IMG/VR virus record: IMGVR_UViG_3300036770_007547
Coordinates: 158,776-222,775 of that record
DNA: 64,000 bases
Reading direction: 5' to 3' (one strand)
The notes beneath the pieces are model-generated. The model ran no database searches. It had not been told where the DNA came from and worked only from the letters and a program-made list of their open reading frames with translations. The position numbers and the translations under genes are program-made. The number at the start of each line of letters is the position of its first letter. The first letter of the stretch is position 1. Shown piece after piece: positions 48,534-63,799 of this stretch.

Positions 48534-49587
48534 TGTATTCGACTTCGAGGTCAGTGAGCTCGGGATAAAAAGGCAAGCTCAATACACGACGGCTCAGCGC
48601 ACTGGCCGAACTCAGGAATCCCGGCCCCGGAAACTGATGGAACTCGGGTATTTCGTGCAACGGAGTACGATAATGCACACGGGCCTCGATGTGGGCCTGC
48701 AAAAGCGATTGCTCCAAGTCATCGCGATGATCCACATCGATCACAAACTTGTGCAAGGCATGTTCGTGTAAATTGTGTTCGGTGATCAAACAGCGCATGG
48801 ATCCTCGGAACTCTTTGATCCAATGTTCGGCGATCTTGGCCCGGCGTTGTTGCCATTGGTCCAGATACCTAGTCTTGACCATGAGATGCGCGGCATCTAT
48901 TTCACTGATGCGACTGTTTGTACCCCAAGTGCGATGACGGTTGTATTTGCCATTGTCGCGCCAAGCCCGTGCATAGTCGGCCAGTCTGGGATCGTTGGTG
49001 ACCACGGCACCACCGTTTCCGTATGCACTGAGATTTTTCATGGGATCAAAACTGATGGCAGCACCAGATCCGATCCTGCCACAATCGTCACTGATCCAAT
49101 GCTGGGCAGCATCTTCTATCACAGCGATGTGAGTGAATTTTTGCCAATCTCGCACCGAACCATGGTGTGTGATTGGATGTCCATAAAGCCCGACCAGACA
49201 CATGGCATTGATGCTGGAACGATCTGGAAGTTTTCTGAGATCCATGATACCGTCTGAATCCACATCGCACAATATCACATCCCAGCCCGCTCGCAGCCAG
49301 GCATTGATGGTGGCCACATATGTCATGGAAGGCACAGCCACCGTGGGTTGGGCGTCGGTTGTTTCGTGTCGCAAGAATTCAGCGATGATTTCCAGGGCTT
49401 GTGTGCCTGAATGACAGGTTATGGCCCATTTGCATCGATTTTTTCGTGCCAGCCAGTGTTCAAACTCTTCGGTCCAGTTTCCACTCATGACCTGCCCAGA
49501 TCTCAACACCTCATCGGTGACATCCAGGATTTCCTGGCGCAAGTTGTTGTACTGTTTCTTGATTCCAGTGAACGGGATTTTGATCAT
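48505..49587 (-). CDS. DegT/DnrJ/EryC1/StrS PLP-dependent sugar aminotransferase
   Basis: CHSGTQAL, IEDAAQ, SFDPMKNLSAYGNGG (PLP lysine), NSRISEIDAA, LSLPFYP. Confidence 0.93.
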   Translation of the reverse strand: MIKIPFTGIKKQYNNLRQEILDVTDEVLRSGQVMSGNWTEEFEHWLARKNRCKWAITCHSGTQALEIIAEFLRHETTDAQPTVAVPSMTYVATINAWLRAGWDVILCDVDSDGIMDLRKLPDRSSINAMCLVGLYGHPITHHGSVRDWQKFTHIAVIEDAAQHWISDDCGRIGSGAAISFDPMKNLSAYGNGGAVVTNDPRLADYARAWRDNGKYNRHRTWGTNSRISEIDAAHLMVKTRYLDQWQQRRAKIAEHWIKEFRGSMRCLITEHNLHEHALHKFVIDVDHRDDLEQSLLQAHIEARVHYRTPLHEIPEFHQFPGPGFLSSASALSRRVLSLPFYPELTDLEVEYITESVKSHV

Positions 49588-49593
49588 GATCGG

Positions 49594-50580
49594 TCACAAT
49601 GCCAGTCGTTGACGCCAGTAATCGCTGTTGATGATCCAGTTGTGATAGATTTGGAATCCTTGGTCAATGTCGACTTTGGGATTGAAATCCAGTAGTTGCT
49701 GTGCTAGAGTGATGTCGAGTCTTCCGCGACTGGGAAAATCCTGATCACGATCGCGCACTTCGATGTCACCACGGCCCACTAGTTTTTGTGCCAGTTGAGC
49801 TGCTTCTAGCAGTGTCCATGCATGACTCTTGGTTATGTTGAAGGTGTGATTGTTGGCTTGATCTCTCAGGCACGCAGCCACGATGCCATCGGCAGCATCA
49901 TCCACGTAGGTAAAATCCAAGCGCTCGTTGGCACCGTTGACGCGTATGGTTTCTCCGCGCATGGCAGTGATCAAGAAACGACTGATCACGCGATCCTCCA
50001 CGTCCAAGGGTCCGTATACTGCACTGGGACGGATCACCACATGCGCCATTCCATACTTGCGGGTGTAATCTCGCACCAACCATTCGCCGGCCAGCTTCAT
50101 GATGCCGTATTGACCTTGTGGACGGCATTCGGCATCTTCGGTCACTGCATCACGGAAGTCGCCATAGACCATGCTGGATGATATGTAAACAAACTTTTTC
50201 ACGCCCGACAGTCTCGCTGCTTCCAAGAGATTCAAAAGACCTTCCATCATGGTACGCGAGCCCAGCGCCGGCGCAGCATTCACCACTTTCTGTCTCGGGA
50301 AACTGGCCATGTGTATCACAGTGTCGGGCTGTTCTTGGCGAAACACATAATCCACATTGTGTGACACAGAGATATCGCCCACATACAATGGTGTATCGGG
50401 TGCGATGCGTTTTTCTCTTTCTTGGAACAGATACTGCATCTCATCTTCGGGTATGATACCGTAGTTGGTTTTGTTGTCCATGACCGTGGTCCAATGTCCC
50501 AGTGCTTGCAGACGATTCACCACATTGTGACCGATGAGACCAAGCCCACCTGTAACTAAGATTTTTCTTGATTGTTCCAT
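49594..50580 (-). CDS. NAD-dependent NDP-sugar epimerase/dehydratase (extended SDR)
   Basis: VTGGLGLIG (GxxGxxG), SSSMVYG, YGIMK (YxxxK), RPSAVYGP, DFTYVDD. Confidence 0.93.
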   Translation of the reverse strand: MEQSRKILVTGGLGLIGHNVVNRLQALGHWTTVMDNKTNYGIIPEDEMQYLFQEREKRIAPDTPLYVGDISVSHNVDYVFRQEQPDTVIHMASFPRQKVVNAAPALGSRTMMEGLLNLLEAARLSGVKKFVYISSSMVYGDFRDAVTEDAECRPQGQYGIMKLAGEWLVRDYTRKYGMAHVVIRPSAVYGPLDVEDRVISRFLITAMRGETIRVNGANERLDFTYVDDAADGIVAACLRDQANNHTFNITKSHAWTLLEAAQLAQKLVGRGDIEVRDRDQDFPSRGRLDITLAQQLLDFNPKVDIDQGFQIYHNWIINSDYWRQRLAL

Positions 50581-50807
50581 CTCAAGTAGTACTCCGTGAC
50601 TTTTCGTGGATCTGAAATTTCGCCTCGTATGGCCACATCATATCCCCAGTAATTTTCATCGGGTTGTGTATGATAGGTGAGATTGTGCGCATGCTCCATG
50701 ACCCATCGTCCTTGCTCGGTCTGTTGCCACTGGTATATGGGTTGTGCCGCATAGATGTCTACATCATCTACATCGCCCAGATTGAAGCGATAGAAAGTGA
50801 TCTTCAC
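50556..50807 (-). CDS. Hypothetical protein
   Basis: 83-aa ORF overlapping both neighbours in the - strand operon. Confidence 0.7.
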   Translation of the reverse strand: MKITFYRFNLGDVDDVDIYAAQPIYQWQQTEQGRWVMEHAHNLTYHTQPDENYWGYDVAIRGEISDPRKVTEYYLRWNNQEKS

Positions 50808-51487
50808 GATTGTACGAAATCAGAAACCATGGGAAAGATACGTGAAATGGCCTCTGCACAGGCCCGAGCCACTTCTTGATGCTCTCGTTGTGTGCCATTG
50901 GCACTCCTGAGCTCGATGAAATGTGCCCATGATCTCAGGGTACCATTCATGTAGATCCTGCTTTCGATCAATCCCTCGGGCAACACGGCACGAGCCTGTT
51001 CCTTGGCGATGCCTTTGGTGATGGCCCATTCGTAGTTGCGTCGAGCCAGTTCGATCACTTCGAGTTGTTTTATGTGCCAGGTCTTGGCCAGCTCTTGCGC
51101 TTCGATATCGGAATCATCGATGCTGATGCTGTTTTGCCGATTCTTTTGATCCTGCATGCGTAGCTCGCGCACTGTGAAATCTAGATCACGTGTGGGGTCG
51201 GCATACCTTTGGCTGAACTCTTGGAACGAGAAACTGCGATGTCTCAGTATCTGCCGTGCGATGTCTCGAGTGGTAGTGATTTCCATGCAGGCCGACACCA
51301 TTTCTAACGGACTCCAATGCTGATGTTTTACCAGGTAGCGTATGAGACGTTCCGAGGTCTCGGTGTTGAACTGATTGGCTGGATTGGAAACACGGGCACA
51401 GTACGCGATGAGTTCTTGTGCATCCGAGATGCCTTGATCTGCAAATTCAGTGCAAGGCTGTGAATAAGAAACCAGGCGTACTTTCAT
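50804..51487 (-). CDS. thyX: FAD-dependent thymidylate synthase
   Basis: AYCARVSNP, HWSPLE, RHRSFSFQEFSQRY (ThyX motif RHRx7SxR), EQARAVLP, QREH. Confidence 0.96.
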   Translation of the reverse strand: MKVRLVSYSQPCTEFADQGISDAQELIAYCARVSNPANQFNTETSERLIRYLVKHQHWSPLEMVSACMEITTTRDIARQILRHRSFSFQEFSQRYADPTRDLDFTVRELRMQDQKNRQNSISIDDSDIEAQELAKTWHIKQLEVIELARRNYEWAITKGIAKEQARAVLPEGLIESRIYMNGTLRSWAHFIELRSANGTQREHQEVARACAEAISRIFPMVSDFVQS

Positions 51488-51789
51488 GCAATACCTTTGA
51501 GTAGTTTGTCGGTTTCGGGTTGCAAAATACCGGCCACAGTCTCGATGTCCAGCACGAACTCCATGCTCACGATGTCTTCCTCATTGGACCGTATGAACGT
51601 GTTGACCATTTGCTCGATGACATCTTCATCAAAGCCCTGTTCTCGGAGACGCTTTAGATTGATGGTTCGTTGGCGCCGTTCGCGTGTACGGAACACCACC
51701 TTTTTCACACAATCTATCGGTACATGCTGCTTGTCGACTTGGTCAACTATGGATTCCCAATTTTTTAGGAAGTCGTTAGTGAGCAGCAT
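51484..51789 (-). CDS. Hypothetical protein
   Basis: Likely start ATG 51789 (MLLTNDF); ATGA-coupled to thyX. Confidence 0.65.
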   Translation of the reverse strand: MLLTNDFLKNWESIVDQVDKQHVPIDCVKKVVFRTRERRQRTINLKRLREQGFDEDVIEQMVNTFIRSNEEDIVSMEFVLDIETVAGILQPETDKLLKGIA

Positions 51790-52471
51790 CCGCCACCACC
51801 TGTTTCTTGGGGCGACCCCGAGTGGTTTTCTTGGCGGTGGCTGGCTCACCCAGCATCTCCCGAGCTTCCTTCAGCAATCTGGCACTCTCGGCCATGAGTC
51901 CTTTGGCTTCGTTTTCCATGCGTTGAGCTTGTTGCAAGAGATTCTGTGCGAGGCTTTGATCATCCAAGGCCATGGAAGCATCACTGCCTGCGATGGTTTT
52001 GGAACCTTGTCGGACTTGATCGGTGGGAGCGCCGATCTCTCGACCATAATCGTCACGTGGACGCACCTTGCCGGTCATGCCACGATTGTTGTCTAGGTCA
52101 GCCATTTCGCGAATGGCATCTTCGCCCAGCTTCATTTTACGGATGATCTCGTTCATCTCTTCGAGGTTGACATGACTACTGGGGTTGGGTGTGACCACGA
52201 TCTGTTTGGTTTGTACTTTTTTCAGCATGCCCTCGGCATGGAGAGTCTGTAGCATGGGTCTGCCATCATTGAACAGTTCGCGAAACAGTGCATCACCGAG
52301 GTTTTCCGCAGTCTGTGCTGGTGCACTTTCGATCACTCGCATCAAGGCATCGTGCATGGCCACTGGTAGAACATCGGGATATACTACCAAGCACATGTGC
52401 TCTTCGGCTGGAATCTCTCGGAACACGATGGCCACCTTTCGGTCTCCGTGTTTGCCCACGTGTTTGATCAT
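51776..52471 (-). CDS. Hypothetical protein (coiled-coil C-terminus)
   Basis: 231 aa; overlaps the upstream ORF by ATGA. Confidence 0.7.
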   Translation of the reverse strand: MIKHVGKHGDRKVAIVFREIPAEEHMCLVVYPDVLPVAMHDALMRVIESAPAQTAENLGDALFRELFNDGRPMLQTLHAEGMLKKVQTKQIVVTPNPSSHVNLEEMNEIIRKMKLGEDAIREMADLDNNRGMTGKVRPRDDYGREIGAPTDQVRQGSKTIAGSDASMALDDQSLAQNLLQQAQRMENEAKGLMAESARLLKEAREMLGEPATAKKTTRGRPKKQVVADAAH

Positions 52472-52701
52472 GATGCTTCTCCTTGTTCGGGTTGTGATTC
52501 GGGTCCGGGTTCTTCGCCGGCAGCCTGTTGTGACTGTGCCTGGTTCAAAACACCAGCCAGGAAAGTGTCCAGGCGTTGGTAAGCTTCACCCACAGCAGTC
52601 ATTTCAGATGCACGGAAGGCACCCCGTGTACATGCCAGTTCAATGATGTTTTTGAGGCTGGCAAGATCGTTGATGTTGAATTCAGAGCGTTGATTTTCCA
52701 T
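52468..52701 (-). CDS. Hypothetical protein
   Basis: 77 aa; TAAATA motif 5 nt upstream of the ATG. Confidence 0.7.
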   Translation of the reverse strand: MENQRSEFNINDLASLKNIIELACTRGAFRASEMTAVGEAYQRLDTFLAGVLNQAQSQQAAGEEPGPESQPEQGEAS

Positions 52702-52721
52702 GCAATTATTTACTACAAAGA

Positions 52722-52751
52722 AAACCCTGGATCAAATAAAATCCAGGGTTT
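52722..52751 (-). terminator. Putative intrinsic terminator after the VWA gene
   Basis: 11-bp inverted repeat AAACCCTGGAT/ATCCAGGGTTT with 8-nt loop, followed by a T-rich tract on the - strand. Confidence 0.7.
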
Positions 52752-52770
52752 GACAGTGATTCTGGAGAAA

Positions 52771-54048
52771 TTACTTGTCTTCGCCGTACAAAGCCCACTG
52801 ACCAAATGGTGGGTGTGGGTCGCGATCACCGTGGATGATCCATACAGTGTCGCAGTAGTTGGGATCGCCCCACGAACCAAACGGATAGCCATCTGTGAAA
52901 ACCACCAAGCGCCGGGGTTCAATCTCTTCGCGTTTGAGATACTCAAAGATGCAATCAAAATCGGTACCACCACCGCCCTTGAGTTCGTAGTTGGCAACAT
53001 CTTCGAGATTTTCGCTGGTGTAGATGCATACATTGTAAACTTCGGTGTCGAACGACGCCATGATGATGCGATAGCTGGAAAATTGTTCCATGATACCAGC
53101 CACTTCGGAGATAAAGTCTCGAGCCTGGGAGTCGGAGATCGAACCCGACATGTCATTCATGATCACGATATCGATCATGTCATCGTTGCGCATGCCCGGC
53201 ATCACCGCATCCATGTCCCAACCTTTGCGGCTGGTCTTCATCCAAGAATAGTCGCTCTTGATAGTGGATTCTAATTGCATGCGGAGCAGTTCACGCCAGT
53301 TCATCTTGGGCTCGGTGAGGTCCTGGATCAGTCGTCGCACACCCAAGGGCAAGTTGCCGGCATCGGATACCTGGGCGGCATTGAGCATGGCTTCTTTGAT
53401 CTCGTCTCGGATCTGATCTCGTTCTTCTTTGCTGAGCCGAGCTGGTCCTTTACCTTTGCCGTCTTGATCACCATCGCTGTTGCCGCCATCTTCGTCACCG
53501 TCCATGTGCTCGTCGATCATGCGATCGATCAATTGGTCAAGATCGATCTTTTCGGCATTTTCATAGATGTCGTCATAGATTTCTTCACTGCTCATGCCCT
53601 CGTATTTGGAGTCATAAAGGCAGGGCACCGAAGTGATGAATTCGCCCACTCGGTGTTTCTTGAGATCGGCATTGACTGCAAAGTCATTGGCGATGTTCCA
53701 CAGTTGTGGATCACGACTGCCGCGTCGTCCAAAATGGTCGTAGACACAATGCAGGACTTCGTGTCCAAACAAGAACTCAATCTCTTTGGGCCGTAGCATC
53801 TTGATGAATCGACTGTTGTAATAGAAATGGCGCCCATCAGTGGCGGCAGTGGCACACCATTCGTCGGCGTTGACCAGTTTGAGTCGCGTGGCTAGATTAC
53901 CAAAAAACGAAGCTCGAAGCAACATACCAATCCGGGCAGTGACCAACATCTCGCGCACTTCTCGATCCAACTTGGCATCCATGGGACCAATTAGATTGGC
54001 AAATTTTTTGGCATCATCTTTGTTCTGGGTACTGGTTGCAGTAGTCAT
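52771..54048 (-). CDS. Metallopeptidase-like + VWA domain protein (DUF2201-like), likely partner of the AAA ATPase
   Basis: TAATDG, GHEVLH (HExxH), acidic linker, DMSGS (MIDAS DxSxS), GGGGTDF, VVFTDG. Confidence 0.85.
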   Translation of the reverse strand: MTTATSTQNKDDAKKFANLIGPMDAKLDREVREMLVTARIGMLLRASFFGNLATRLKLVNADEWCATAATDGRHFYYNSRFIKMLRPKEIEFLFGHEVLHCVYDHFGRRGSRDPQLWNIANDFAVNADLKKHRVGEFITSVPCLYDSKYEGMSSEEIYDDIYENAEKIDLDQLIDRMIDEHMDGDEDGGNSDGDQDGKGKGPARLSKEERDQIRDEIKEAMLNAAQVSDAGNLPLGVRRLIQDLTEPKMNWRELLRMQLESTIKSDYSWMKTSRKGWDMDAVMPGMRNDDMIDIVIMNDMSGSISDSQARDFISEVAGIMEQFSSYRIIMASFDTEVYNVCIYTSENLEDVANYELKGGGGTDFDCIFEYLKREEIEPRRLVVFTDGYPFGSWGDPNYCDTVWIIHGDRDPHPPFGQWALYGEDK

Positions 54049-54072
54049 TCGCGCTCCTTCATTGTATTCTAT

Positions 54073-54101
54073 ATTATACGATAATCATGATTTCTGGTCA
54101 A
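54073..54101 (-). promoter_or_regulatory. Sigma70-like promoter for the VWA gene
   Basis: - strand TTGACC (54101-54096), 17-nt spacer, TATAAT (54078-54073); GAAGGAG RBS before ATG 54048. Confidence 0.8.
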
Positions 54102-54462
54102 CCGGATGCGCCAGCTGGAAAAAAGCCAGTTCTGCGTCGGTGGCCACGTAGATACGCAGATCATCGTAGCCGTTGGTCCATGACCAGTGTGGGTTGCAAT
54201 GATCAGGACGCTCAGTTAGTATGCTCTGTGCGATTCGGAAAGGTTGTGTTTTTATCCCGGGAAAGACAGTGACCCACTTCTGCATCTTGCTGTAATCGCG
54301 AATCTCGGCACTCCAGCCATAGGTGTCAAAGAACCATTTCAGTGCATCGTTGAATTGCAGTGGACCGTGATTCACGGCCATACGGTTGGAGAACTTGATG
54401 CAGTATTCAAACAAGTCTCGGTAGGTATAGCGACCATCCAATCGTATGATTTCGTATTTCAT
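54085..54462 (-). CDS. Hypothetical protein
   Basis: 125 aa; TAAATA 6 nt upstream. Confidence 0.65.
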
Positions 54463-54740
54463 CGTTGGTATTTAAGACTGAACATGATGGCATCACGACT
54501 GTCACGGAAATGGAAGTCCACGACCCAGAGGTTGCTTTGGGTGTCGGGTGTGTTGGCAGTGACGAACTGCCATTTGCGACGATCACCAGGCGGGCCAAAA
54601 TCTCGGGCAACATTTCGCAGTAGATCCTGTACCTGTTGATGCGAGTAAGGTACGAATTCGTACTGGACCACGGTGGTGGGAGGGACGGGATCTGACATAG
54701 CCCTATGTCCGCTCACGCGATAGATCCCGTCCCGGTTCAA
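54459..54740 (-). CDS. Hypothetical protein
   Basis: 93-aa ORF overlapping the next gene; start uncertain. Confidence 0.55.
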
Positions 54741-54742
54741 CC

Positions 54743-55831
54743 TTAATTGTTGGCTTGAAGGATGTACTTGCCGTATTTCTGATGGAACTCATCAAAGTGC
54801 TTGAGCTTGGTGGGCTGGAATGGTAGACCATATGTGGTCAGCGCGATCCTGGCACCCATGACAACGATCTCGGTCTCAAAATTGTCCATCATGAACTTGA
54901 AGAAGTTATCGGCCATGGCATGGAACTCTTTGTCCGGAGACTTGTTTTCGATGGCTGCCTTGAGTTCGTAGCACAACGAAGTCACGAGACTGTACATGGC
55001 CGAAACTTCTTTGACTTTGAGCTCTTTTTCTTTGCCGGCTAGAATGGCTTCGGGCTTGGGCAGTTTACTTGAAATCTTGCGGTGAGCCATGAACTTGACT
55101 GCGAGACCCTCGCCCACAGTACCAGCGATGAGATCGGTGGCAGTGACATCATCGAGGTCCTCGTCTTTGAGCAGTTCGCTGACAAAATGCCACGAGCGTG
55201 GGGTAGCGAACGCACGGCTGGCGCTCTTGCTGTCAAAGTCGTAGAGATCTTGTTTGGCGAACGTGATATAACCCACCACATCCTTGTGCTCGTTGTTGAG
55301 CACTGCCCACTCATGCCATGCGGCAAAGTCGGGACGCATTTCCACATGCACGAAACGGTTGCTCAGCGGAGTGGGCATGCGATAAGTGACACCTTTGTCG
55401 CTCTCGCGATTGCCCGCGGCGATCATCACCACATTGTCGGGTAGCACATACCGACCAACACGACGATTCAGCACCAACTGATAGGCCGCAGCCTGCACCG
55501 CCGGTGGTGCCGAATTCATCTCGTCCATGAATAACACAACGATGGGATACTGGCTGGCCAATTCCTCATCGGGCAGATCGATGGGCGGTGCCCAATCCAT
55601 TTTACCGGCGTCTTTGTTGTAGAACGGAATACCACGGATGTCAGTGGGATCCATCTGACCCAGACGGAGATCGATCATGAGCCCGCCCAATTCTTGAGCG
55701 ATCTCGGCCACCACTTCACTCTTGCCGATGCCGGGAGGGCCCCAGAGAAAAATCGGACGTTTCACAGCGAAACATTTTTGGATGGTTTTGCGAGCACCAA
55801 TCGCGGTAACGGTGCGATGTTCTACGGACAT
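54743..55831 (-). CDS. MoxR/dynein-related AAA+ ATPase
   Basis: Walker A GPPGIGKS, Walker B VLFMDE, AAGNR, PLSNRF, ATPRSW. Confidence 0.9.
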
Positions 55832-55868
55832 AGGGCTATTCCTCTTGGTTGATTGCTACAGTCACTAA

Positions 55869-55973
55869 ATTATACAATATCTCGATATATTGGTCAACTA
55901 CGAAAGTCAATGAATTTGTGGGCCTTGTTGTTTACTGTTCTAGTATTGTATGAAAATGGGATTTTCTGGTCAA
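55869..55973 (-). promoter_or_regulatory. Two tandem sigma70-like promoters upstream of the AAA gene
   Basis: TTGACC(55973-55968)-N17-TACAAT(55950-55945) and TTGACC(55897-55892)-N17-TATAAT(55874-55869). Confidence 0.75.
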
Positions 55974-56000
55974 CCTCGAGCATTGTAGCGTAAATACCAC

Positions 56001-56234
56001 ATGATTTCGGCCAAACAACATCTCAAAGACAGCAACATGACCTACTGGTATCACTTCCGTCACAGCATGGCCAATGGTGGAAGATTGCTGTGGCTGGCCA
56101 TCAGCAGTTTCGTGCATGCTGTGTTTCCGCAGATAGCGCCACAACATGCCGCTCGCGGCATCATCCGCATCTACAATCGCATGCGTGAATACCGCCACCT
56201 CAGGCGATTGATGAAGTCAGTAGACTCGACTTGA
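56001..56234 (+). CDS. Small hypothetical protein (DUF6356-like)
   Basis: HLKDSNMTYWYH..H...SSFVHAVFP pattern; TAAATA 4 nt upstream. Confidence 0.6.
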   Translation: MISAKQHLKDSNMTYWYHFRHSMANGGRLLWLAISSFVHAVFPQIAPQHAARGIIRIYNRMREYRHLRRLMKSVDST

Positions 56235-56906
56235 TGTGCCGGGCCGGGCTCGTGAGTTTTCGGGCAAATCTTCAAACACCGTGACGCTGGGTGCAATCAC
56301 TGTTCCGTTGCCAATCTTCATGTGTCGACCGTCTTGATGTCGATTGACGATGGTGCTTTTGACTCCCACAAAGCAATCTTCCCCCACTTCGCATCCGCCA
56401 GTCACGCAGGCACCGATTTGTATCAATGATCGAGATCCCACCACGACGTCGTGGCTGATGTAGGCCTGATCCTTGACTGTGACATGATCATGTATCACAG
56501 CACCGTGATTGATCTGGGCTCGTGATCCTATGATGACGTTGTGTCCCAATCGCGCTCGTGGACTGATCTGTGCCGAAGGATGTGCCACAGTGGCACCCAC
56601 CAATCTATGGTCCTGCATGATGCCTATCAGTCCCAGTCGTTTGTTGCGTGTGCGTCGACTTATCGGATGCTGCCCCGGTACCCAGGTGGTACCCACTAGG
56701 TATTCACAATCGGCTCTTTCATCCAGGGCTTCGTCGAGCGTGATATCTTCTAGACCCAAGTCATTGGGGATACCATCGGGATCGTACACACCTCTTATGG
56801 GACGTTGTGTGGCCGATACAAGTTCTACTAGATGTGGAAGGCTGGCGGCCCATCCCAAGATCACGATGGGTCGGCGATTGTAGGTCAAGTCAAGTGTGAA
56901 TCTCAT
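56217..56906 (-). CDS. NeuD/PglD-like sugar acyltransferase (hexapeptide beta-helix)
   Basis: N-terminal IVILG Rossmann-like segment, ATVAHPSAQIS, hexapeptide repeats ([LIV]G.....I), IGHD-like ISHD motif. Confidence 0.8.
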   Translation of the reverse strand: MRFTLDLTYNRRPIVILGWAASLPHLVELVSATQRPIRGVYDPDGIPNDLGLEDITLDEALDERADCEYLVGTTWVPGQHPISRRTRNKRLGLIGIMQDHRLVGATVAHPSAQISPRARLGHNVIIGSRAQINHGAVIHDHVTVKDQAYISHDVVVGSRSLIQIGACVTGGCEVGEDCFVGVKSTIVNRHQDGRHMKIGNGTVIAPSVTVFEDLPENSRARPGTSSRVY

Positions 56907-56939
56907 GTTGGATATTTATTGGTTGATGACATGGTCATG

Positions 56940-56964
56940 AAAAAGCCCGCCGAAGCGGGCTTTT
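56940..56964 (-). terminator. Intrinsic terminator downstream of tmRNA (possibly bidirectional)
   Basis: - strand AAAAGCCCGC-TTCG-GCGGGCTTTTT. Confidence 0.9.
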
Positions 56965-57278
56965 GGTGGGTTTGATAACAAGGCCTGTCCTGCCCCGTCT
57001 AGCCTTAGGCGGCTAGAGCAAACACCTCATCGTTGGCATTTGTAGGTTTCGCTTCTACGGCCGGGAAATCCCAACCCTAAGGGCTTCTGCCTTGCCCCGC
57101 TGTCCACTCTGCTACTCCTTGCACTGTCGAAACTATTTCGGGCCCATCAGAAGCATACTAGCAACACCGACCATAAAGGTTCTCTTTACGATGTTTACAG
57201 TCTAATATGCTTCTGGTGGACCCGGCCGGTACCGCCCCGGCGTCCAGAACACATTTTGCATCGCTTCATACAGCGATA
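56965..57278 (-). ncRNA. ssrA: Circularly permuted (two-piece) tmRNA; tag ANDEVFALAA*
   Basis: - strand order: acceptor piece ending GCCGG-GGCGGTA-CCGGC-CGGGTCC-A-CCA (57214), 68-nt intervening segment with 12-bp stem, then coding piece starting GGGCCCGAAATAGTTTCGAC (57145). G3:U70 pair; tag ORF 57037-57005. Outer ends approximate. Confidence 0.92.
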
Positions 57279-57285
57279 ATACTAT

Positions 57286-58293
57286 TTACTTGATCTGTGA
57301 CCAAACTTTTTGACGAATATCATCCTGCAGTTTTGTGGGAAGATGCACATAGTCGAGTTCAGCACTCAGCTTGGCACCGTTCTTGAAAGCCCAATCAAAG
57401 AACTTGATGACTTCTTGGCTTTCTTTCTTGTTCACAGGTTCTTTGTACATAAGGATGAAGCTGGCAGTGGTGATGGGCCATGAGTCTTTGCCGGGTTGAT
57501 TGACAATGCTGAGTCCCATACCAGGAACTGAGAACCAATCGGCACCTGCTGCGGCCGCTGCGAATGTAGCATCATCAGGCCGGACGAACTTGCCATCTTT
57601 GTTCTGAAGTTGGAAGTAAGGGATGCTGTTCTTCTTAGCATAGGCATATTCTACATAACCGATGCTACCTTTGATACGACCAACATTTGCTGCCACGCCT
57701 TCATTGCCCTTACCGCCAACAGACGACGCTGCGGGCCACTTGACAGCAGCACCTTTGCCTACCTTTTCAGCCCAGAGCTTTGAAGCTTCGGTGAGGTAAT
57801 CGGTAAAGTTGAAGGTTGTGCCTGAACCGTCTGCACGATGGACTACTGTGATATTGAGATCGGGCAGTTTCTTGCCAGGGTTCAGTGCAGCGATCTTGGG
57901 ATCGTTCCAGTTAACGATCCAGCCCATGAACATCTCTGCCAGCACTTCGCCAGTTACTTTGAGTTCACCCTGCTTAAAACCATCAAGGTTGAACACGGGC
58001 ACAGTGCCGCCAATGATCGCGGGGAACTGCACCATGCCATCCTTGTCTAAGTCTACACCTTTGACGGGTGCATCGCTGGCACCAAATGTAACTGTCTTGG
58101 CACGGATCTGACGCAGGCCGCCACTTGAACCAATACTCTGATAGTTGAGGCTGACACCGGTTTCTTTCTTGTAGGCTTCAGCCCACTTGGCGTATACAGG
58201 ATAGGGAAATGTTGCGCCTGCACCTGTGATAGTCTGTGCTTGCGCTGATACAACAAATAGTGCCGCCAGCATGGAAATTACAAATTGTTTCAC
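57286..58293 (-). CDS. pstS: Phosphate ABC transporter substrate-binding protein
   Basis: GTG start 58293 with AAGGAG RBS; signal peptide; ITGAGATFPYP, YQSIGSSGG, FGASD, RADGSGTT, GKGNEGV, GYVEYAY. Confidence 0.96.
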   Translation of the reverse strand: MKQFVISMLAALFVVSAQAQTITGAGATFPYPVYAKWAEAYKKETGVSLNYQSIGSSGGLRQIRAKTVTFGASDAPVKGVDLDKDGMVQFPAIIGGTVPVFNLDGFKQGELKVTGEVLAEMFMGWIVNWNDPKIAALNPGKKLPDLNITVVHRADGSGTTFNFTDYLTEASKLWAEKVGKGAAVKWPAASSVGGKGNEGVAANVGRIKGSIGYVEYAYAKKNSIPYFQLQNKDGKFVRPDDATFAAAAAGADWFSVPGMGLSIVNQPGKDSWPITTASFILMYKEPVNKKESQEVIKFFDWAFKNGAKLSAELDYVHLPTKLQDDIRQKVWSQIK

Positions 58294-58329
58294 TGTGGTC
58301 TCCTTGTGAGTGTGATAGTGATTGTGTGC

Positions 58330-58378
58330 TTTATACACCAACCTATTTAATTACGTTGATATTACAATCTTGTTACAA
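58330..58378 (-). promoter_or_regulatory. Putative Pho box array plus -10 element upstream of pstS
   Basis: - strand TTGTAAC-N4-TTGTAAT-N4-ACGTAAT (11-nt period, 58378-58350), then TATAAA at 58335-58330. Confidence 0.65.
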
Positions 58379-61368: not shown

Positions 61369-61449
61369 TGGTGCCCCTGCTCGGATTCGAACCGAGAACT
61401 TCACCACTCCTTTTGAGAGAGCTGCCTTTACCAATTTGGCCACAGGGGC
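61369..61449 (-). tRNA. trnL: tRNA-Leu(CAA)
   Basis: GCCCCTG/CAGGGGC acceptor, CT-CAA-AA loop, TTCGAAT, encoded CCA. Confidence 0.88.
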
Positions 61450-61470
61450 GGGAATCAATTAAATATTTCC

Positions 61471-62358
61471 ATGAACAAGCTAACGATGGATCGCACCATG
61501 GTAGATGTGTACATCACCAACGTGTGCAATCTTACCTGTGAGGACTGCCGGAGTTTCAACAACTACCGGTTCAAAGGACACATCCAGTACGATCATGCCG
61601 TGCACCAGGCCTGGGCCTCGCGCTTGGATATTCCTGATTTTGGTGTGCTGGGTGGGGAACCCTGTCTCCATCCCGATCTATTTGATTGGTTACATGGACT
61701 GCGTGAATGCTGGCCGCGATCTCGGGGACTATTGATCACCAACGGTACACACATGTCCCGGGTCAAGAATCTCCATGAAACCTTGGCCGAGCTTGATTAC
61801 GAAGTTCAGATATCTATACACAGTCCTCGCATGCGGGGATTCGTGGCCGATCAGATTCTCCAAACTTTCGGCATCTGTGAAGTGGTACCGCCACGCATCG
61901 ACGACGACTGGAAACACAACACAAATTTTTATCTCATGTCTAGCCTAGGTGTCAAACTAGAGATACAGAACACCTGGAACTTTCAAACATCACCATTTGC
62001 TGGTCCGGGATTCCAGTTGCATCGCAGCGACCCATATCGAGCTCATGCCAATTGCAACATAAAACACTGCACGCATTTTATTGCAGGGAAATTTTACAAA
62101 TGTGCCGTGGTGGGCTTGATGCCTGAATTTTTGAAACAACAAGGAAAACCCGTGCCAGAAATCCTGGAATCCTACCAGCCGTTGACATTGGAAAATCTCA
62201 GTCAGGCCAAGCTGGATGAGCTGCTTGATCCCATACCACAATGCCAGGTTTGTCCGGAAAACTATACCAAACAACACATCATGGCCGATTTCAAACAACC
62301 ACAGATACTAAAACGCTACGAAAAGTATCAACCGTCGCTTTCCTGCCAGCAACCATGA
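61471..62358 (+). CDS. Radical SAM protein with C-terminal Cys-rich domain
   Basis: CNLTCEDC, LGGEPCL, ITNGT; C-terminal C..HCTH...YKC...CQVC. Confidence 0.88.
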   Translation: MNKLTMDRTMVDVYITNVCNLTCEDCRSFNNYRFKGHIQYDHAVHQAWASRLDIPDFGVLGGEPCLHPDLFDWLHGLRECWPRSRGLLITNGTHMSRVKNLHETLAELDYEVQISIHSPRMRGFVADQILQTFGICEVVPPRIDDDWKHNTNFYLMSSLGVKLEIQNTWNFQTSPFAGPGFQLHRSDPYRAHANCNIKHCTHFIAGKFYKCAVVGLMPEFLKQQGKPVPEILESYQPLTLENLSQAKLDELLDPIPQCQVCPENYTKQHIMADFKQPQILKRYEKYQPSLSCQQP

Positions 62359-62789
62359 GGGAATGATTCTATCATCCATGAAGCTAAAGGTGTAACAAAT
62401 TTGAATCGCAATTCACCATCCCACCCTATGTCTCGACTGGGAAATGCTGTGTCTACTGGACCAAACCCATTGTTGTCATGATGGAATCGAGCACGATAGC
62501 GTATCAATGGCCATATGTTGATGTCGTTGAATTTCAGCTCTTCGATGTGATATGACTGATTCACGACTAGATCTGCTGCCTCGGGGCTTGGTTGATCATC
62601 TATGTGAAGGCGTTTACCGCTGAGCGCCAACGCGAAGTCGTGTGTTTGGCGTTGGTCGCTGTGTTCCCAATCCACCACATGCAATTGATGTGTCACAGGC
62701 GAACTCAAAATCTCGACACCGTTGATGTTCAGACAAAATTTGCTGGGAATACAGGTCTTGAACTTTATGCTGATTTTGATTTTATTCAC
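62328..62789 (-). CDS. Hypothetical protein
   Basis: 153 aa, GTG start; TAAATA 4 nt upstream. Confidence 0.6.
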   Translation of the reverse strand: MNKIKISIKFKTCIPSKFCLNINGVEILSSPVTHQLHVVDWEHSDQRQTHDFALALSGKRLHIDDQPSPEAADLVVNQSYHIEELKFNDINIWPLIRYRARFHHDNNGFGPVDTAFPSRDIGWDGELRFKFVTPLASWMIESFPHGCWQESDG

Positions 62790-62883
62790 GCGATATTTAT
62801 AAAGTCATGTGCTACACAGGTTGGAACTTACAGAAGAAATCGTCGAGTGACCCATCGGTGCAGGACAGGTATCGACGATATCG

Positions 62884-62957
62884 TGGTCTCGGTGGGAGGA
62901 ATCGAACCTCCGCCACATGCTCCCAAAGCACGCATGATACCATTTCACCACACCGAG
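62884..62957 (-). tRNA. trnP: tRNA-Pro(TGG)
   Basis: CTCGGTG/CACCGAG acceptor, TT-TGG-GA loop, TTCGATT, CCA. Confidence 0.9.
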
Positions 62958-63016
62958 TCTCGGGGCCGGGGATCGAAGATTTGAGCTTCGGGCTCACTTG
63001 GCAAATCCCCAATGAT

Positions 63017-63105
63017 TGGAGGAGGGATGGTAGAATCGAACTCCAACCGCTCTCGCAGTCCATCTGTTTTCAAGACAGTGCTGGGCCCAGCCCAGATAAC
63101 CCTCC
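63017..63105 (-). tRNA. trnS: Atypical tRNA-Ser(TGA)
   Basis: CT-TGA-AA loop, long variable arm, TTCGATT, CCA. Folds best with an 8-nt acceptor strand, 6-bp D-stem, 4-bp T-stem with one bulge and U73. Confidence 0.75.
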
Positions 63106-63217
63106 AGTGATTGACCGGTTACCGGATCCGGTTCGGGCTTTTGGTCCCCGAGGCTCGTAAACTCACCCACCCTTGATGTCGTGCCTGCGCAGAGGACCGG
63201 CCGGGCATCGCCGTGTG

Positions 63218-63292
63218 TGGTGCTGATGAGAGGAATCGAACCTCCGACTTACGCCTTACCAAGGCGTTACTCTACCCCTGAGTTACATCAGC
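63218..63292 (-). tRNA. trnT: tRNA-Thr(GGT)
   Basis: GCTGATG/CATCAGC acceptor, TT-GGT-AA loop, CCA. Confidence 0.93.
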
Positions 63293-63401
63293 TGGGATCA
63301 GTCGCACCAGGTCTCATAGGCATTGACCAACATCACGCATTCTAGGACTTCGCCGGTGACGATCAGTGCCAAAGCAGACAAGGCCAGTGCTGCAAGATAT
63401 A

Positions 63402-63479
63402 TGGTGGCAGTGGAGGGATTCGAGCCCCCGATCTTCCGCGTATGAAGCGGCTGCATTGGACCAGCTATGCTACACTGCC
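63402..63479 (-). tRNA. trnM: tRNA-Met(CAT), elongator-type (Ile2 not excluded)
   Basis: GGCAGTG/CACTGCC acceptor, TT-CAT-AC loop, CTCGAAT T-loop, CCA. Confidence 0.85.
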
Positions 63480-63558
63480 TGGATTGATTTGTGTTCATCA
63501 TGTATTATATGACACTAGCATGGAAATGTGTTTGCACTTTCATACATGAGCTTATTAC

Positions 63559-63633
63559 TGGCCCGACCGGCAGGAATCGAACCCGCATCGTACGCTTTAG
63601 AAGAGCGTTGCCTTTCCGTTAGACTACGGTCGG
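63559..63633 (-). tRNA. trnR: tRNA-Arg(TCT)
   Basis: CCGACCG/CGGTCGG acceptor, CT-TCT-AA loop, CCA. Confidence 0.9.
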
Positions 63634-63642
63634 TAATTGTAT

Positions 63643-63717
63643 TGGTGGGTGCGGGGAGTTTCGAAATCCCGACTCTCTGGTTAAAAGCCAGATACTCTTC
63701 CTCTGAGTTACGCACCC
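63643..63717 (-). tRNA. trnK: tRNA-Lys(TTT)
   Basis: GGGTGCG/CGCACCC acceptor, CT-TTT-AA loop, CCA. Confidence 0.9.
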
Positions 63718-63723
63718 CGGATT

Positions 63724-63799
63724 TGGTAGCCACAGCTGGGTTCGAACCAGCGACCACCGCGTTATCAACACGGTGCTCTACCTGCTGAGCTATGTGGCT
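63724..63799 (-). tRNA. trnI: tRNA-Ile(GAT)
   Basis: AGCCACA/TGTGGCT acceptor, TT-GAT-AA loop, TTCGAAC, CCA. Confidence 0.92.

What the first reader, a model, noticed from the sequence alone, without database searches (positions are those of the whole stretch)
56965..57288. Phage-encoded circularly permuted (two-piece) tmRNA
Seen: the acceptor piece (T-loop GGCGGUA, G3:U70, ACCA) precedes the coding piece. The 68-nt intervening segment is closed by a 12-bp stem (57150-57161/57202-57213). Tag ANDEVFALAA* with a hairpin over the stop, a UUCG terminator, and TAAATA just upstream. Known: permuted tmRNAs occur in Alphaproteobacteria (GGCRGUA T-loop), some Betaproteobacteria and some cyanobacteria. 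Inference: an alpha-like scaffold with a beta-like tag. If the host is Burkholderiales-like, as PstS suggests, the phage tmRNA differs in architecture from the host's and may alter ribosome rescue or resist anti-tmRNA defences.
Basis: partly seen in the sequence, partly recalled or inferred. Interest (0 to 1): 0.68.

Follow-up and report, generated by a model that had tools for sequence, protein, structure and literature searches.

The report
Two-piece tmRNA gene in a jumbo phage
A large phage from a subsurface metagenome carries an intact, circularly permuted (two-piece) tmRNA gene for ribosome rescue. It belongs to a large, previously uncharted phage-borne branch of a known RNA family, so it is a real but not unprecedented kind of phage gene.

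Summary
ARAGORN calls a permuted tmRNA with tag ANDEVFALAA*. Rfam scores are tmRNA_permuted 123.5 bits, beta_tmRNA 116.1 bits and alpha_tmRNA 63.5 bits (partial). The window is the end of a 222,775-bp IMG/VR virus record, about 64% complete, with a Rak2/CBB/Phosso-like baseplate.

Phage-encoded two-piece tmRNAs are already published, so the kind is known. New here:

- The gene belongs to a phage-borne branch: at least 98 IMG/VR loci with the same tag core, in three or more unrelated phage lineages.
- That branch lies outside a 99/99-supported clade of bacterial beta-type two-piece tmRNAs.
- The tag was not found in about 900 sampled Burkholderiales genomes, nor in any bacterial-looking metagenome contig.
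- Across 16 phage copies, 27 pairs are 99.3% paired, 16 show compensatory changes and G3:U70 is invariant. The tag peptide survives 8 synonymous changes against the closest relative.
- "Alpha-like scaffold" holds only for the elbow (T-loop GGCGGUA with D-loop AAAUAG). This variant covaries perfectly and recurs in the phage family. The rest is beta-like.

SmpB is not encoded in the held DNA, nor in five other phage genomes with permuted tmRNAs. Host, expression and processing remain untested.

The parts
57283..57288 (-). TAAATA box 7 nt upstream of the first paired base. It overlaps the TAA stop of the upstream PstS-like gene. Candidate -10 or late-promoter-like element.
   Evidence: Sequence. 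TAAATA sits at the same distance before the RNA in the T4-like phage copies L134, L137 and L142. Not tested functionally.
57276..57303 (-). Alternative sigma-70-like promoter: TGGTCA, 16-nt spacer, TATTAT.
   Evidence: Consensus scan, 9 of 12 matches. A start about 7 nt downstream would cut helix P2a, so this candidate is the less likely.
57214..57275 (-). Acceptor piece: P2 5' strands, T-arm (57225-57241) with T-loop GGCGGUA, acceptor 3' strand CGGGUCC, A73, encoded CCA.
   Evidence: Rfam alignments, ARAGORN, covariation in T-arm, acceptor stem and P2.
57146..57213 (-). Intervening segment of 68 nt, removed on maturation. A 12-bp closing stem stacks under the acceptor stem, with an inner 9-bp hairpin.
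   Evidence: Fold z=-5.1. The closing stem is kept with compensatory changes in relatives although sequence and length vary from 7 to 458 nt.
56940..57145 (-). Coding piece: acceptor 5' strand GGGCCCG (57145-57139), D-loop analogue AAAUAG (57138-57133), P2 3' strands, hairpins, tag frame, 3' hairpins and terminator.
57059..57076 (-). Extra hairpin GGUUGGG-AUUU-CCCGGCC upstream of the tag. It makes the G1-to-tag distance 108 nt instead of 84-86 nt.
   Evidence: Fold. The same insertion is in L138 and L187, where one pair changes from G-C to A-U. Bacterial copies have 84-86 nt.
57005..57037 (-). Tag reading frame GCC AAC GAU GAG GUG UUU GCU CUA GCC GCC UAA = ANDEVFALAA*.
   Evidence: ARAGORN. 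The same peptide is kept through 8 synonymous changes in L187.
56999..57016 (-). Hairpin CUAGCC / GGCUAG with the UAA stop codon in its loop.
   Evidence: Folds. GCTAG follows the stop in most phage relatives.
56940..56964 (-). Intrinsic terminator: 10-bp stem, UUCG loop, U-tract.
   Evidence: Folds. A 28-nt stretch including this terminator is identical in L202, L205 and L210.
57286..58341 (-). Upstream neighbour: PstS-like periplasmic phosphate-binding protein, an auxiliary metabolic gene.
   Evidence: Pfam PBP_like_2, E=9.6e-34. A 70.5% identical homologue lies 1.7 kb from the tmRNA in the 260-kb viral contig L230.
56217..56906 (-). Downstream neighbour: hexapeptide-repeat acyltransferase.
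   Evidence: Pfam Hexapep, E=4.8e-16.
61369..63799 (-). Cluster of 7 tRNA genes (Leu-CAA, Pro-UGG, Thr-GGU, Met-CAU, Arg-UCU, Lys-UUU, Ile-GAU) on the same strand, 4 kb upstream. It is part of the phage's translation gene set.
   Evidence: ARAGORN and Rfam.

Best explanation
This is a functional ssrA gene of a jumbo phage, encoding a two-piece tmRNA. Shown: the gene is transcribed from the minus strand as a unit of about 335 nt, in the order acceptor piece, 68-nt intervening hairpin, coding piece, terminator. Inferred from what is known of two-piece tmRNAs (Caulobacter; Keiler et al. 2000, as summarised in PMC11915505): host tRNA-processing enzymes cut the precursor. RNase P cuts at G1 (57145), and 3' trimming proceeds to the encoded CCA (57214). 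This would leave a 62-nt acceptor piece and a coding piece of about 205 nt, held together by the acceptor stem and the P2 helices. Inferred: host AlaRS charges it through G3:U70 and A73, and host SmpB and EF-Tu deliver it to ribosomes stalled on broken mRNAs. No SmpB or AlaRS gene lies in the 222 kb held. Translation would then resume at GCC 57037 and add ANDEVFALAA, whose ALAA end sends the product to host ClpXP-type proteases. For the phage this would keep ribosomes and amino acids available while mRNAs are being degraded and host ssrA transcription may have stopped. The gene is one copy of a phage-borne lineage of beta-type permuted tmRNAs that has diverged from the bacterial lineage and occurs in unrelated phage groups.
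For: Identity. Selection on structure: 16 phage copies, 27 pairs in P2, T-arm, acceptor stem and intervening-segment stem; 99.3% of cells paired; 16 pairs with compensatory changes; 0 of 500 shuffles as high; slid controls 43-50% paired; G3:U70 kept in 16 of 16 while three other acceptor pairs change on both sides. Tertiary covariation of the elbow: T-loop position 2 U with D-loop GG in 143 unique sequences, G with AG in 14, no exception apart from 3 copies with a longer loop. Selection on the peptide: window against L187, a relative also recovered by a motif outside the tag, shows 8 differences in the 30 coding nt, all synonymous. Other relatives keep AND-x-x-[FY]-[AL]-[LM]-AA. The gene has its own terminator, and no ORF of 80 aa or more lies within the RNA itself: only the 3' end of the PstS-like ORF reaches into the promoter region upstream of it. 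Phage context: baseplate wedge, hub and virion proteins; even 50-54% G+C with no break at the gene; a single copy in the record; no integrase. Lineage: a 99/99-supported branch separates all bacterial beta two-piece tmRNAs from the phage copies. The phage copies occur in complete T4-like (165 kb) and T5-like (99 kb) genomes and in jumbo contigs of 194-260 kb. Precedents: PMC9004378, PMC7162821.
Against: No RNA data exist: all runs holding the locus are DNA, so transcription, cleavage into two pieces, charging and tagging are untested. The host is unknown, so compatibility with its SmpB and AlaRS is assumed. The T-loop is non-canonical, and the RNA scores far below bacterial members on RF01850 (116 bits against 206-313). 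The record is only about 64% complete, so a phage SmpB cannot be excluded. The 5' end and the promoter are uncertain.
Confidence: 0.7

Rival explanations
1. Take-over or decoy. The phage RNA competes with the host tmRNA for SmpB and stalled ribosomes, to change what is tagged or how tagged proteins are handled, or to blunt a host response that depends on trans-translation. Supplementing rescue would not be its main role.
For: Phage copies differ systematically from the bacterial beta two-piece set: position 5 of the tag, U instead of C before the resume codon, and diverse tRNA-like domains. Cultured phages carry this type in hosts not expected to have it. A phage tRNA-like-domain-only molecule (DS6A) inhibits tmRNA in E. 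coli (PMC4131195, PMC11915505).
Against: The full tag frame, with stop codon and ALAA end, is kept under peptide-level selection, which a mere SmpB sponge would not need. Within the wider phage family the tag varies at positions 4-8, so there is no single phage-specific tag. Nothing shows altered adaptor or protease recognition.
Confidence: 0.15
2. Host-derived copy. The phages captured ssrA from a still unsampled bacterial lineage whose own tmRNA has the ANDEVFALAA tag. On this view the 'phage lineage' only mirrors that host group.
For: The same tag occurs in three unrelated phage lineages, which a shared host group would explain. The genome searches were samples: 120 rows and two sets of 401 genomes.
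Against: None of 111 bacterial tmRNAs recovered with an open codon at that position has V. The V-tag was found in 0 of 401 and 0 of 401 genomes. All 15 metagenome contigs with the tag have 0.35-0.47 G+C, and none matches bacterial ssrA neighbourhoods, whereas the four high-G+C R-tag 'viral' contigs (0.61-0.62) and the one-piece L160 (0.47) do. The tRNA-like domains of the phage copies are far more diverse than those of all bacterial copies. The phage copies lie outside the bacterial clade.
Confidence: 0.1
3. Passenger or integration relic. The gene is a leftover of integration into a host ssrA (an attP-like copy) and has no role in the phage.
For: tmRNA genes are common integration sites, and ssrA fragments occur in prophages (PMC4383910, PMC9004378). 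Four high-G+C 'viral' contigs in the scan (L135, L147, L150, L154) do carry host ssrA flanks matching Rhodocyclaceae-type neighbourhoods, and the one-piece L160 matches a Parasutterella locus.
Against: The gene is full length with its own terminator. No tyrosine integrase lies in the 222 kb. It has diverged deeply from bacterial copies while keeping every pair. It is conserved in lytic-type T4-like, T5-like and jumbo phages.
Confidence: 0.03

Closest known systems
Bacterial betaproteobacterial two-piece tmRNA (Rfam RF01850; Azonexus/Dechloromonas, Thauera, Accumulibacter, Propionivibrio and other Rhodocyclaceae)
   Same: Same permuted gene order and same P2 core (GUUCUGGAC ... UUUCGACAG). Same 10-residue tag type ANDE-x-F-A-x-AA, with the 3' motif CCUUGUuAyCAAA and a UUCG terminator. 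It is the best-scoring Rfam subtype.
   Different: The window scores 116 bits against 206-313 for bacterial members. T-loop GGCGGUA, not UUCGAYU. Acceptor GGGCCCG, not GGGGGUG. G1-to-tag 108 nt, not 84-86. V, not R or Q, at tag position 5. U, not C, before the resume codon. It lies outside the 99/99 bacterial clade.
Alphaproteobacterial two-piece tmRNA (Rfam RF01849; Caulobacter type)
   Same: T-loop GGCRGUA and D-loop GAAAUAG, that is, the same variant elbow. Permuted order.
   Different: Only 63.5 bits, over model positions 40-271. The P2 helices, the tag (alpha type is ANDN...ALAA, longer) and the 3' domain do not match.
Phage-encoded two-piece tmRNAs of marine myophages (Methylophilales phage Melnitz, Pelagibacter phage Mosig; Buchholz et al. 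2022, PMC9004378)
   Same: A complete permuted ssrA in a large lytic-type myophage, not matched to the host's own tmRNA lineage. That paper's survey already counted 53 unique two-piece tmRNA structures among phages.
   Different: Those are alpha-type and lie behind a glutamine riboswitch. This one is beta-type. No riboswitch was detected in the window at Rfam gathering thresholds. It sits next to a PstS-like gene in a Rak2/Phosso-like jumbo phage.
Cultured phages with permuted tmRNAs scoring best on RF01850: Stenotrophomonas phage Marzo (Menderavirus) and Synechococcus phage BUCT-ZZ01 (Kyanoviridae)
   Same: Same Rfam subtype at about 95 bits, no SmpB gene, tmRNA near tRNA genes. BUCT-ZZ01 groups with the phage copies in the tree.
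   Different: Different tags (VAANDDSYTVRIAA, ANDETFSMALAA), canonical T-loops, unrelated phage lineages.
Sinorhizobium phage Phosso (469 kb), nearest cultured relative by baseplate wedge (37% identity)
   Same: Jumbo myophage of the same broad structural lineage. It has a permuted tmRNA with T-loop GGCGGUA and D-loop GAAAUAG, and no SmpB.
   Different: Alpha-type overall (RF01849, 108 bits), tag ANDNVSTKVALAA, and a very long intervening segment of about 440 nt that ARAGORN misses.
tmRNAs of huge phages (Al-Shayeb et al. 2020, PMC7162821) and one-piece mycobacteriophage/phage G tmRNAs (PMC4131195)
   Same: Part of the translation-related gene load of very large phages, proposed to keep ribosomes working during infection.
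   Different: Some huge phages also encode SmpB, which is absent from the DNA held here. The mycobacteriophage genes are one-piece.

Membership tests
Two-piece (circularly permuted) tmRNA | Gene order: 3' acceptor strand, T-arm and CCA lie upstream of the 5' acceptor strand and the tag frame. | tested here: met
   ARAGORN permuted call. RF04321 full-length match 1-213 at 123.5 bits, gathering 47. Coordinates read.
Two-piece (circularly permuted) tmRNA | tRNA-Ala-like acceptor: 7-bp stem with G3:U70, discriminator A, CCA. | tested here: met
   GGGCCCG pairs with CGGGUCC, followed by ACCA. G3:U70 is invariant in 16 of 16 phage relatives while neighbouring pairs covary.
Two-piece (circularly permuted) tmRNA | T-arm and a D-loop analogue forming the elbow. 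| tested here: met
   5-bp T-stem with compensatory changes. Variant T-loop GGCGGUA paired with variant D-loop AAAUAG. Perfect covariation across 160 unique sequences.
Two-piece (circularly permuted) tmRNA | Tag reading frame: Ala resume codon, short peptide with a hydrophobic xAA end, in-frame stop. | tested here: met
   ANDEVFALAA* at 57037-57005. Peptide conserved through synonymous changes.
Two-piece (circularly permuted) tmRNA | The precursor is cleaved into two RNAs that stay base-paired. | not testable with these tools
   Only DNA runs hold the locus. The stem closing the intervening segment is conserved, which fits processing but does not show it.
Two-piece (circularly permuted) tmRNA | Works with SmpB. 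| tested here: inconclusive
   No PF01668 match in the 222 kb held, nor in the five other phage genomes with permuted tmRNAs that were searched: two complete IMG/VR records and three deposited genomes. Use of host SmpB is assumed. The record is about 64% complete.
Bacterial beta two-piece lineage (RF01850 as found in Rhodocyclaceae) | Score over the family threshold. | tested here: met
   116.1 bits against 84, though bacterial members score 206-313 bits.
Bacterial beta two-piece lineage (RF01850 as found in Rhodocyclaceae) | Uniform tRNA-like domain: T-loop UUCGAYU, acceptor GGGGGUG, G1-to-tag 84-86 nt, tag ANDE[RQ]FA[LIVM]AA. | tested here: not met
   The window has GGCGGUA, GGGCCCG, 108 nt and V at tag position 5. 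The bacterial figures come from 99 genomes.
Bacterial beta two-piece lineage (RF01850 as found in Rhodocyclaceae) | Falls inside the bacterial clade in a tree. | tested here: not met
   The bacterial copies are on one side of a 99/99 branch, and the window and the other V-tag phage copies are on the other. Long branches make the deep order unsure.
Alphaproteobacterial two-piece tmRNA (RF01849) | T-loop GGCRGUA with D-loop GAAAUAG. | tested here: met
   Identical to the Rfam alpha consensus shown.
Alphaproteobacterial two-piece tmRNA (RF01849) | Alpha-type P2 helices, 5' hairpin, ANDN...-type tag and 3' domain. | tested here: not met
   63.5 bits, with only model positions 40-271 matched. The P2 and tag sequences follow the beta consensus.

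The most novel reading that the evidence does not exclude
Beta-type permuted tmRNA genes form a self-standing phage lineage. On this reading it is old and more diverse than its bacterial sister group, and it has moved between unrelated phage families (T4-like, T5-like, Rak2/Phosso-like jumbo). It would work with host SmpB and AlaRS even in hosts whose own tmRNA is one-piece or of another type. It has repeatedly switched its elbow to the G55/A18 'alpha' configuration, and some copies carry protein genes (an SNase-like nuclease) in the intervening segment. That would make it a mobile ribosome-rescue cassette of phages rather than a series of recent host captures.
Probability: 0.35. Interest if true: 0.55.

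Novelty: new member of a known kind. Interest (0 to 1): 0.4.

Why it matters
Phage tmRNAs are annotated routinely but almost never studied. Here a set of about a hundred natural variants shows which parts of a two-piece tmRNA tolerate change: the acceptor pairs 4-6, the T-stem, and the length and content of the intervening segment, from 7 to 458 nt. It also shows which parts do not: G3:U70, the coupled pair between T-loop and D-loop, and the AND...AA tag frame. The set gives a natural covariation test of the elbow contact. It also warns that the subtype of a phage tmRNA is not a safe predictor of the host. If the RNA works with a host SmpB of another lineage, it would be a handy tool for studying the specificity of trans-translation.

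Tried and rejected
- blastn of the window's tmRNA against 50,697 isolated phage genomes found no match. Relatives appeared only through queries from other family members.
- RF00023 (one-piece tmRNA) does not match at the locus, only weakly at tRNAs.
- A T-arm pattern scan of IMG/VR gave 7 loci. Of these, L006 and L010 are alpha-type and L007 and L012 one-piece tmRNAs; in the other three (L008, L009, L011) neither ARAGORN nor Rfam found a tmRNA. None was a close relative.
- Sequencing runs: the locus is held at 0.98 of its words only in one subsurface metagenome, which is probably its source. Lagoon and lake runs hold small shares. No run is RNA.
- Laying contigs at 80% likeness mostly collected other organisms' pstS and tRNA-like fragments. 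It gave no information on expression or processing.
- Sharkady and Williams 2004 (PMC516066) is not held. The defining features of the beta lineage were therefore taken from Rfam alignments and from 99 bacterial genes analysed here.
- The string ANDEVFALAA occurs in no held paper, nor in the supplements of two tmRNA papers.
Protein word searches were not used for the host because they return no taxonomy.
- I first read the V-tag as a phage-specific signature and then weakened this. Relatives found by a motif outside the tag carry ANDEVYALAA, ANDSVYALAA, ANDEQFALAA, ANDNAFLMAA and ANDEHFLMAA.
- An alpha/beta recombinant origin was considered and rejected. Only the two interacting loops are alpha-like, and the same change recurs in 14 phage copies.
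Full report
**1. The observation**

The feature exists exactly as described, on the minus strand.

- ARAGORN reports a permuted tmRNA at 56914-57306(-) with tag ANDEVFALAA*.
- Rfam reports tmRNA_permuted (RF04321) at 57005-57275, 123.5 bits against a gathering score of 47.
- Rfam also reports beta_tmRNA (RF01850) at 56938-57328, 116.1 bits against 84.
- The alpha model (RF01849) reaches only 63.5 bits over model positions 40-271. The one-piece model does not match here.

Reading the RNA strand gives this layout:

| Element | Sequence or size | Window coordinates |
|---|---|---|
| P2a 5' strand | CGCUG | starts at 57275 |
| T-stem | GCCGG / CCGGC | 57241-57237 / 57229-57225 |
| T-loop | GGCGGUA | 57236-57230 |
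| Acceptor 3' strand | CGGGUCC | 57224-57218 |
| Discriminator and CCA | ACCA | 57217-57214 |
| Intervening segment | 68 nt | 57213-57146 |
| Acceptor 5' strand | GGGCCCG (G3:U70) | 57145-57139 |
| Tag frame | ANDEVFALAA* | 57037-57005 |
| Hairpin with the stop codon in its loop | CUAGCC / GGCUAG | 57016-56999 |
| Terminator | UUCG loop | 56964-56940 |

The intervening segment alone folds into the 12-bp closing stem plus an inner hairpin (-23.7 kcal/mol, z=-5.1). The whole 341-nt unit folds with z=-4.65. TAAATA lies at 57288-57283.

**2. Context**

The window is bases 158776-222775 of a 222,775-bp linear IMG/VR virus record that CheckV rates 64% complete.

- It encodes a baseplate wedge (phrog_10646, E=1.6e-285), a baseplate hub/tail lysozyme and virion proteins.
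- The wedge protein is 37% identical to that of Sinorhizobium phage Phosso (469 kb). It is about 34% identical to those of the CBB/Rak2-like jumbo phages of 350-380 kb. A full genome of roughly 350 kb is therefore plausible.
- G+C is an even 50-54% with no break at the gene.
- The tmRNA fills the gap between a PstS-like gene (57286-58341) and a hexapeptide acyltransferase (56217-56906).
- Seven tRNA genes lie 4 kb upstream on the same strand.
- The record holds one tmRNA, no SmpB, no tyrosine integrase and no AlaRS.
- The DNA is held almost completely in one subsurface metagenome. Small shares occur in lagoon and lake-water runs. No RNA run holds it, and laying contigs added nothing on expression.

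**3. What is already known**

Phage-encoded tmRNAs, including two-piece ones, are published.

- Buchholz et al. 2022 (PMC9004378) described a two-piece ssrA in the OM43 myophage Melnitz. Among 18,146 phage genomes they counted 402 with tmRNAs and 133 unique structures, 53 of them two-piece.
- Al-Shayeb et al. 2020 (PMC7162821) list tmRNAs and SmpB among the translation genes of huge phages.
- The 2025 tmRNA database holds 79 bacteriophage sequences. It also explains that RF04321 merges the alpha, beta and cyanobacterial permuted models (PMC11915505).

The kind of thing is therefore known, and standard annotation tools find it.

**4. Relatives in bacteria**

A scan of one genome per species used the tag pattern with the fifth codon left open. 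Most were Rhodocyclaceae: Azonexus, Thauera, Accumulibacter, Propionivibrio, Methyloversatilis and others.

- 99 of the tmRNAs are permuted. Their tags are ANDERFALAA (64), ANDERFAIAA, ANDERFAVAA, ANDERFAMAA and ANDEQFAIAA. None is ANDEVFALAA.
- These bacterial genes are very uniform: T-loop UUCGAUU (86) or UUCGACU (11); acceptor GGGGGUG (91 of 99); discriminator-to-G1 6-51 nt; G1-to-tag 84-86 nt.
- They score 206-313 bits on RF01850.
- Only 4 of 151 genomes sampled from the order of the Azonexus genome carry the permuted type at all.

**5. Relatives in phages**

The same tag pattern found 28 IMG/VR loci, and 20 of 24 ARAGORN calls have exactly ANDEVFALAA.

- The four viral-contig copies with bacterial-type R-tags (L135, L150, L154, and the one-piece L160), plus L147, whose R-type tag was read directly because ARAGORN made no call there, behave as host DNA. 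L135, L147, L150 and L154 have 61-62% G+C and flanks matching Rhodocyclaceae-type bacterial ssrA neighbourhoods at 66-90% protein identity. L160 has 47% G+C and flanks 99-100% identical to a Parasutterella locus. So these five are host DNA.
- All V-tag loci have 34-47% G+C and no such flanks.
- An any-codon pattern for NDEVFAxAA* found 98 IMG/VR loci. 64 of the 75 new ones parsed as permuted tmRNAs, with G+C 0.31-0.46 and intervening segments of 31-458 nt.
- The metagenome scan gave only 15 contigs, all of this low-G+C, phage-like kind.
- The V-tag was not found in 401 genomes sampled from the order, nor in 401 from the family of the Azonexus genome.
- Carriers include a complete 165-kb genome whose terminase is 50% identical to those of T4-like cyanomyophages. 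Another is a complete 99-kb genome whose terminase is 49.5% identical to those of T5-like Vibrio phages. Others are contigs of 148-260 kb. At least three unrelated phage lineages are therefore involved.

**6. The closest copies**

- L187/L189 (194-kb contig) share the T-stem GCCGG, a GGCAGUA T-loop, the extra hairpin before the tag and the terminator type. They lie beside homologues of window-genome genes that are 38-49% identical in protein.
- L230 (260-kb contig) has the most similar P2 region, and a PstS homologue 70.5% identical lies 1.7 kb away.
- L261 has the same acceptor stem, GGGCCCG. L260 has the same elbow, GGCGGUA with AAAUAG.
- A 28-nt stretch including the terminator is identical in L202, L205 and L210.

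**7. Evidence that the RNA is under selection**

In an alignment of 16 distinct phage copies (A1), I tested 27 pairs of P2, T-arm, acceptor stem and the stem closing the intervening segment.

- 99.3% of cells are paired, and 16 pairs show changes on both sides.
- All five measures exceed every one of 500 shuffles. Sliding the partners drops pairing to 43-50% (RNAalifold agrees).
- G3:U70 is kept in all 16, while acceptor pairs 4-6 change on both sides in 6-9 sequences each.
- The tag peptide is identical between the window and L187 despite 8 nucleotide differences in 30 coding positions, all synonymous. L187 was also recovered by a motif outside the tag, so this pair was not chosen for its peptide.
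- Relatives found by that outside motif carry ANDEVYALAA, ANDSVYALAA, ANDEQFALAA, ANDNAFLMAA and ANDEHFLMAA. The tag evolves as a peptide of the form AND-x-x-[FY]-[AL]-[LM]-AA. V at position 5 is common in the phage family but not universal.

**8. The 'alpha-like' feature**

The Rfam alpha consensus has T-loop GGCgGUA and, after the acceptor strand, GAAAuAGGAUCGAC. The beta consensus has UUCGAUU and uaCUGGUUUCGAC. The window has GGCGGUA and GAAAUAGUUUCGAC, so the two loops that meet in the elbow are alpha-like. The flanking helices and everything else are beta-like.

Over 160 unique sequences:

| T-loop position 2 | D-loop dinucleotide | Unique sequences |
|---|---|---|
| U | GG | 143 |
| U | GT (loop 1-2 nt longer, so the register shifts) | 3 |
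| G | AG | 14 |

All 14 G/AG cases are phage copies, and none of 94 bacterial ones has it. This is the signature of one tertiary contact, the analogue of tRNA G18-U55, kept by a double change. It is not the signature of recombination between alpha and beta genes. Phosso, the nearest cultured phage, has a fully alpha-type tmRNA with the same elbow.

**9. Phylogeny**

Trees were built from the acceptor piece plus the coding piece, with the intervening segment removed.

- In the quick 125-row tree, the smallest well-supported set holding the window has 22 rows: 19 V-tag viral contigs, the two cultured phages BUCT-ZZ01 and Marzo, and the window (SH-aLRT 99).
- In the careful 54-row tree, the 28 sampled bacterial beta two-piece tmRNAs sit on one side of a 99/99-supported branch. 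Three host-derived 'viral' contigs sit with them, as does Stenotrophomonas phage Marzo on a long branch. The window, L138, L153, the T5-like group with Synechococcus phage BUCT-ZZ01, and the T4-like group lie on the other side as deep branches.
- Holding all phage rows together is not rejected (p-AU 0.27).
- Long branches and a single alpha outgroup make the deep order and the root unsure. Hence neither the direction of transfer nor single versus multiple origin is settled.

**10. Host**

The subtype does not name the host.

- Marzo infects Stenotrophomonas and BUCT-ZZ01 infects Synechococcus elongatus. Both carry permuted tmRNAs scoring best on RF01850, at about 95 bits, with tags unlike the bacterial beta set.
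- The window's 51% G+C is well below the 0.61-0.62 G+C measured at the four Rhodocyclaceae-like host-derived ssrA loci. Most family members have 31-46%.
- None of the five other phage genomes with permuted tmRNAs that I searched encodes SmpB: two complete IMG/VR records and the deposited genomes of Phosso, BUCT-ZZ01 and Marzo. These RNAs presumably rely on the host protein.

**11. Mechanism proposed**

Shown: a complete permuted ssrA under purifying selection on helices, elbow, G3:U70 and tag peptide, in a phage.

Inferred from the established biology of two-piece tmRNAs:

1. The gene is transcribed as one precursor. The promoter is perhaps the TAAATA box 7 nt before P2a, which recurs at that distance in the T4-like copies. 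The sigma-70-like alternative would start inside P2a.
2. RNase P cuts at G1, and the 3' end is trimmed to the encoded CCA. This releases the 68-nt hairpin.
3. Host AlaRS charges the RNA, and host SmpB and EF-Tu deliver it to stalled ribosomes.
4. Translation resumes at GCC and adds ANDEVFALAA, and ClpXP-type proteases degrade the product.

The benefit to a large phage would be recycling of ribosomes and amino acids while mRNAs are being destroyed.

Rivals:

- A competitor or decoy role.
- Capture from an unsampled host lineage.
- An integration relic.

**12. Verdict**

The finding is real and correctly described. It is a new, divergent member of a known kind. The added value is the large phage-borne branch and the elbow covariation. 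Interest is moderate.

Noticed in passing
L235:4523-4963 (+); same ORF in L196 and L251 (IMG/VR contigs): In three viral contigs, the intervening segment of the permuted tmRNA gene is 455 nt long and holds a 146-aa ORF. The ORF matches Pfam SNase (staphylococcal nuclease homologue) at E=2.6e-12. A protein gene therefore sits inside the part of the tmRNA precursor that is cut out.
   Followed up: partly
L210:10736-10852 (-) and L205 (172-kb and 166-kb viral contigs): The 117-nt intervening segment begins with AAGGAG, 6 nt, then ATG, and opens a 55-codon frame that runs into the coding piece. It may be a small translated ORF in the precursor.
   Followed up: no
window 10413-25373 (+): A single ORF of 4986 aa lies directly after the baseplate wedge gene. 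It has only weak Pfam hits (FG-GAP repeat, CBM_5_12). It is probably a giant tail-fibre or host-recognition protein.
   Followed up: partly
window 42155-56906: A block of auxiliary genes lies on either side of the tmRNA region: carbamoyltransferase (42155-43642), DegT-type aminotransferase (48505-49587), NAD-dependent epimerase/dehydratase (49594-50580) and hexapeptide acyltransferase (56217-56906). Together they look like a sugar-modification pathway. The PstS-like gene lies at 57286-58341.
   Followed up: no
window 52771-55831 (-): A MoxR-type AAA+ ATPase (54743-55831) lies near a DUF2201 putative metallopeptidase with a VWA-like domain (52771-54048). This is a recurrent gene pair of unknown role in phages.
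   Followed up: no
window 61369-63799 (-): Seven tRNA genes lie at the very end of the contig. The record breaks off in or just after this cluster, so more tRNAs may lie in the missing part.
   Followed up: no
L161 (Synechococcus phage BUCT-ZZ01, ON615601.1): The permuted tmRNA (L161:1473-1891, tag ANDETFSMALAA) is not annotated in the record, and a 'hypothetical protein' CDS (L161:1395-1589) overlaps it. ARAGORN also finds a tRNA with a CUA anticodon (amber-reading) at L161:351-426.
   Followed up: no
L166:1458-2147 (-) (Sinorhizobium phage Phosso, PV764938.1): An alpha-type permuted tmRNA has an intervening segment of about 440 nt. Rfam finds it (RF01849 108 bits, RF04321 113 bits) but ARAGORN does not.
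   Followed up: partly
L135, L147, L150, L154, L160 (IMG/VR contigs): These 'viral' contigs carry bacterial-type tmRNAs. L135, L147, L150 and L154 have 61-62% G+C and flanks 66-90% identical in protein to Rhodocyclaceae-type ssrA neighbourhoods. L160 has 47% G+C and flanks 99-100% identical to a Parasutterella locus. They are most likely prophage ends or host DNA, not phage-encoded tmRNAs.
   Followed up: partly
window 57290-58251, run X4 record 17: A 10-kb lagoon-metagenome contig matches the PstS-like gene at about 91% identity. The match ends at the gene's 3' end, just before the tmRNA. A relative therefore has the same PstS but a different or very divergent downstream region.
   Followed up: no
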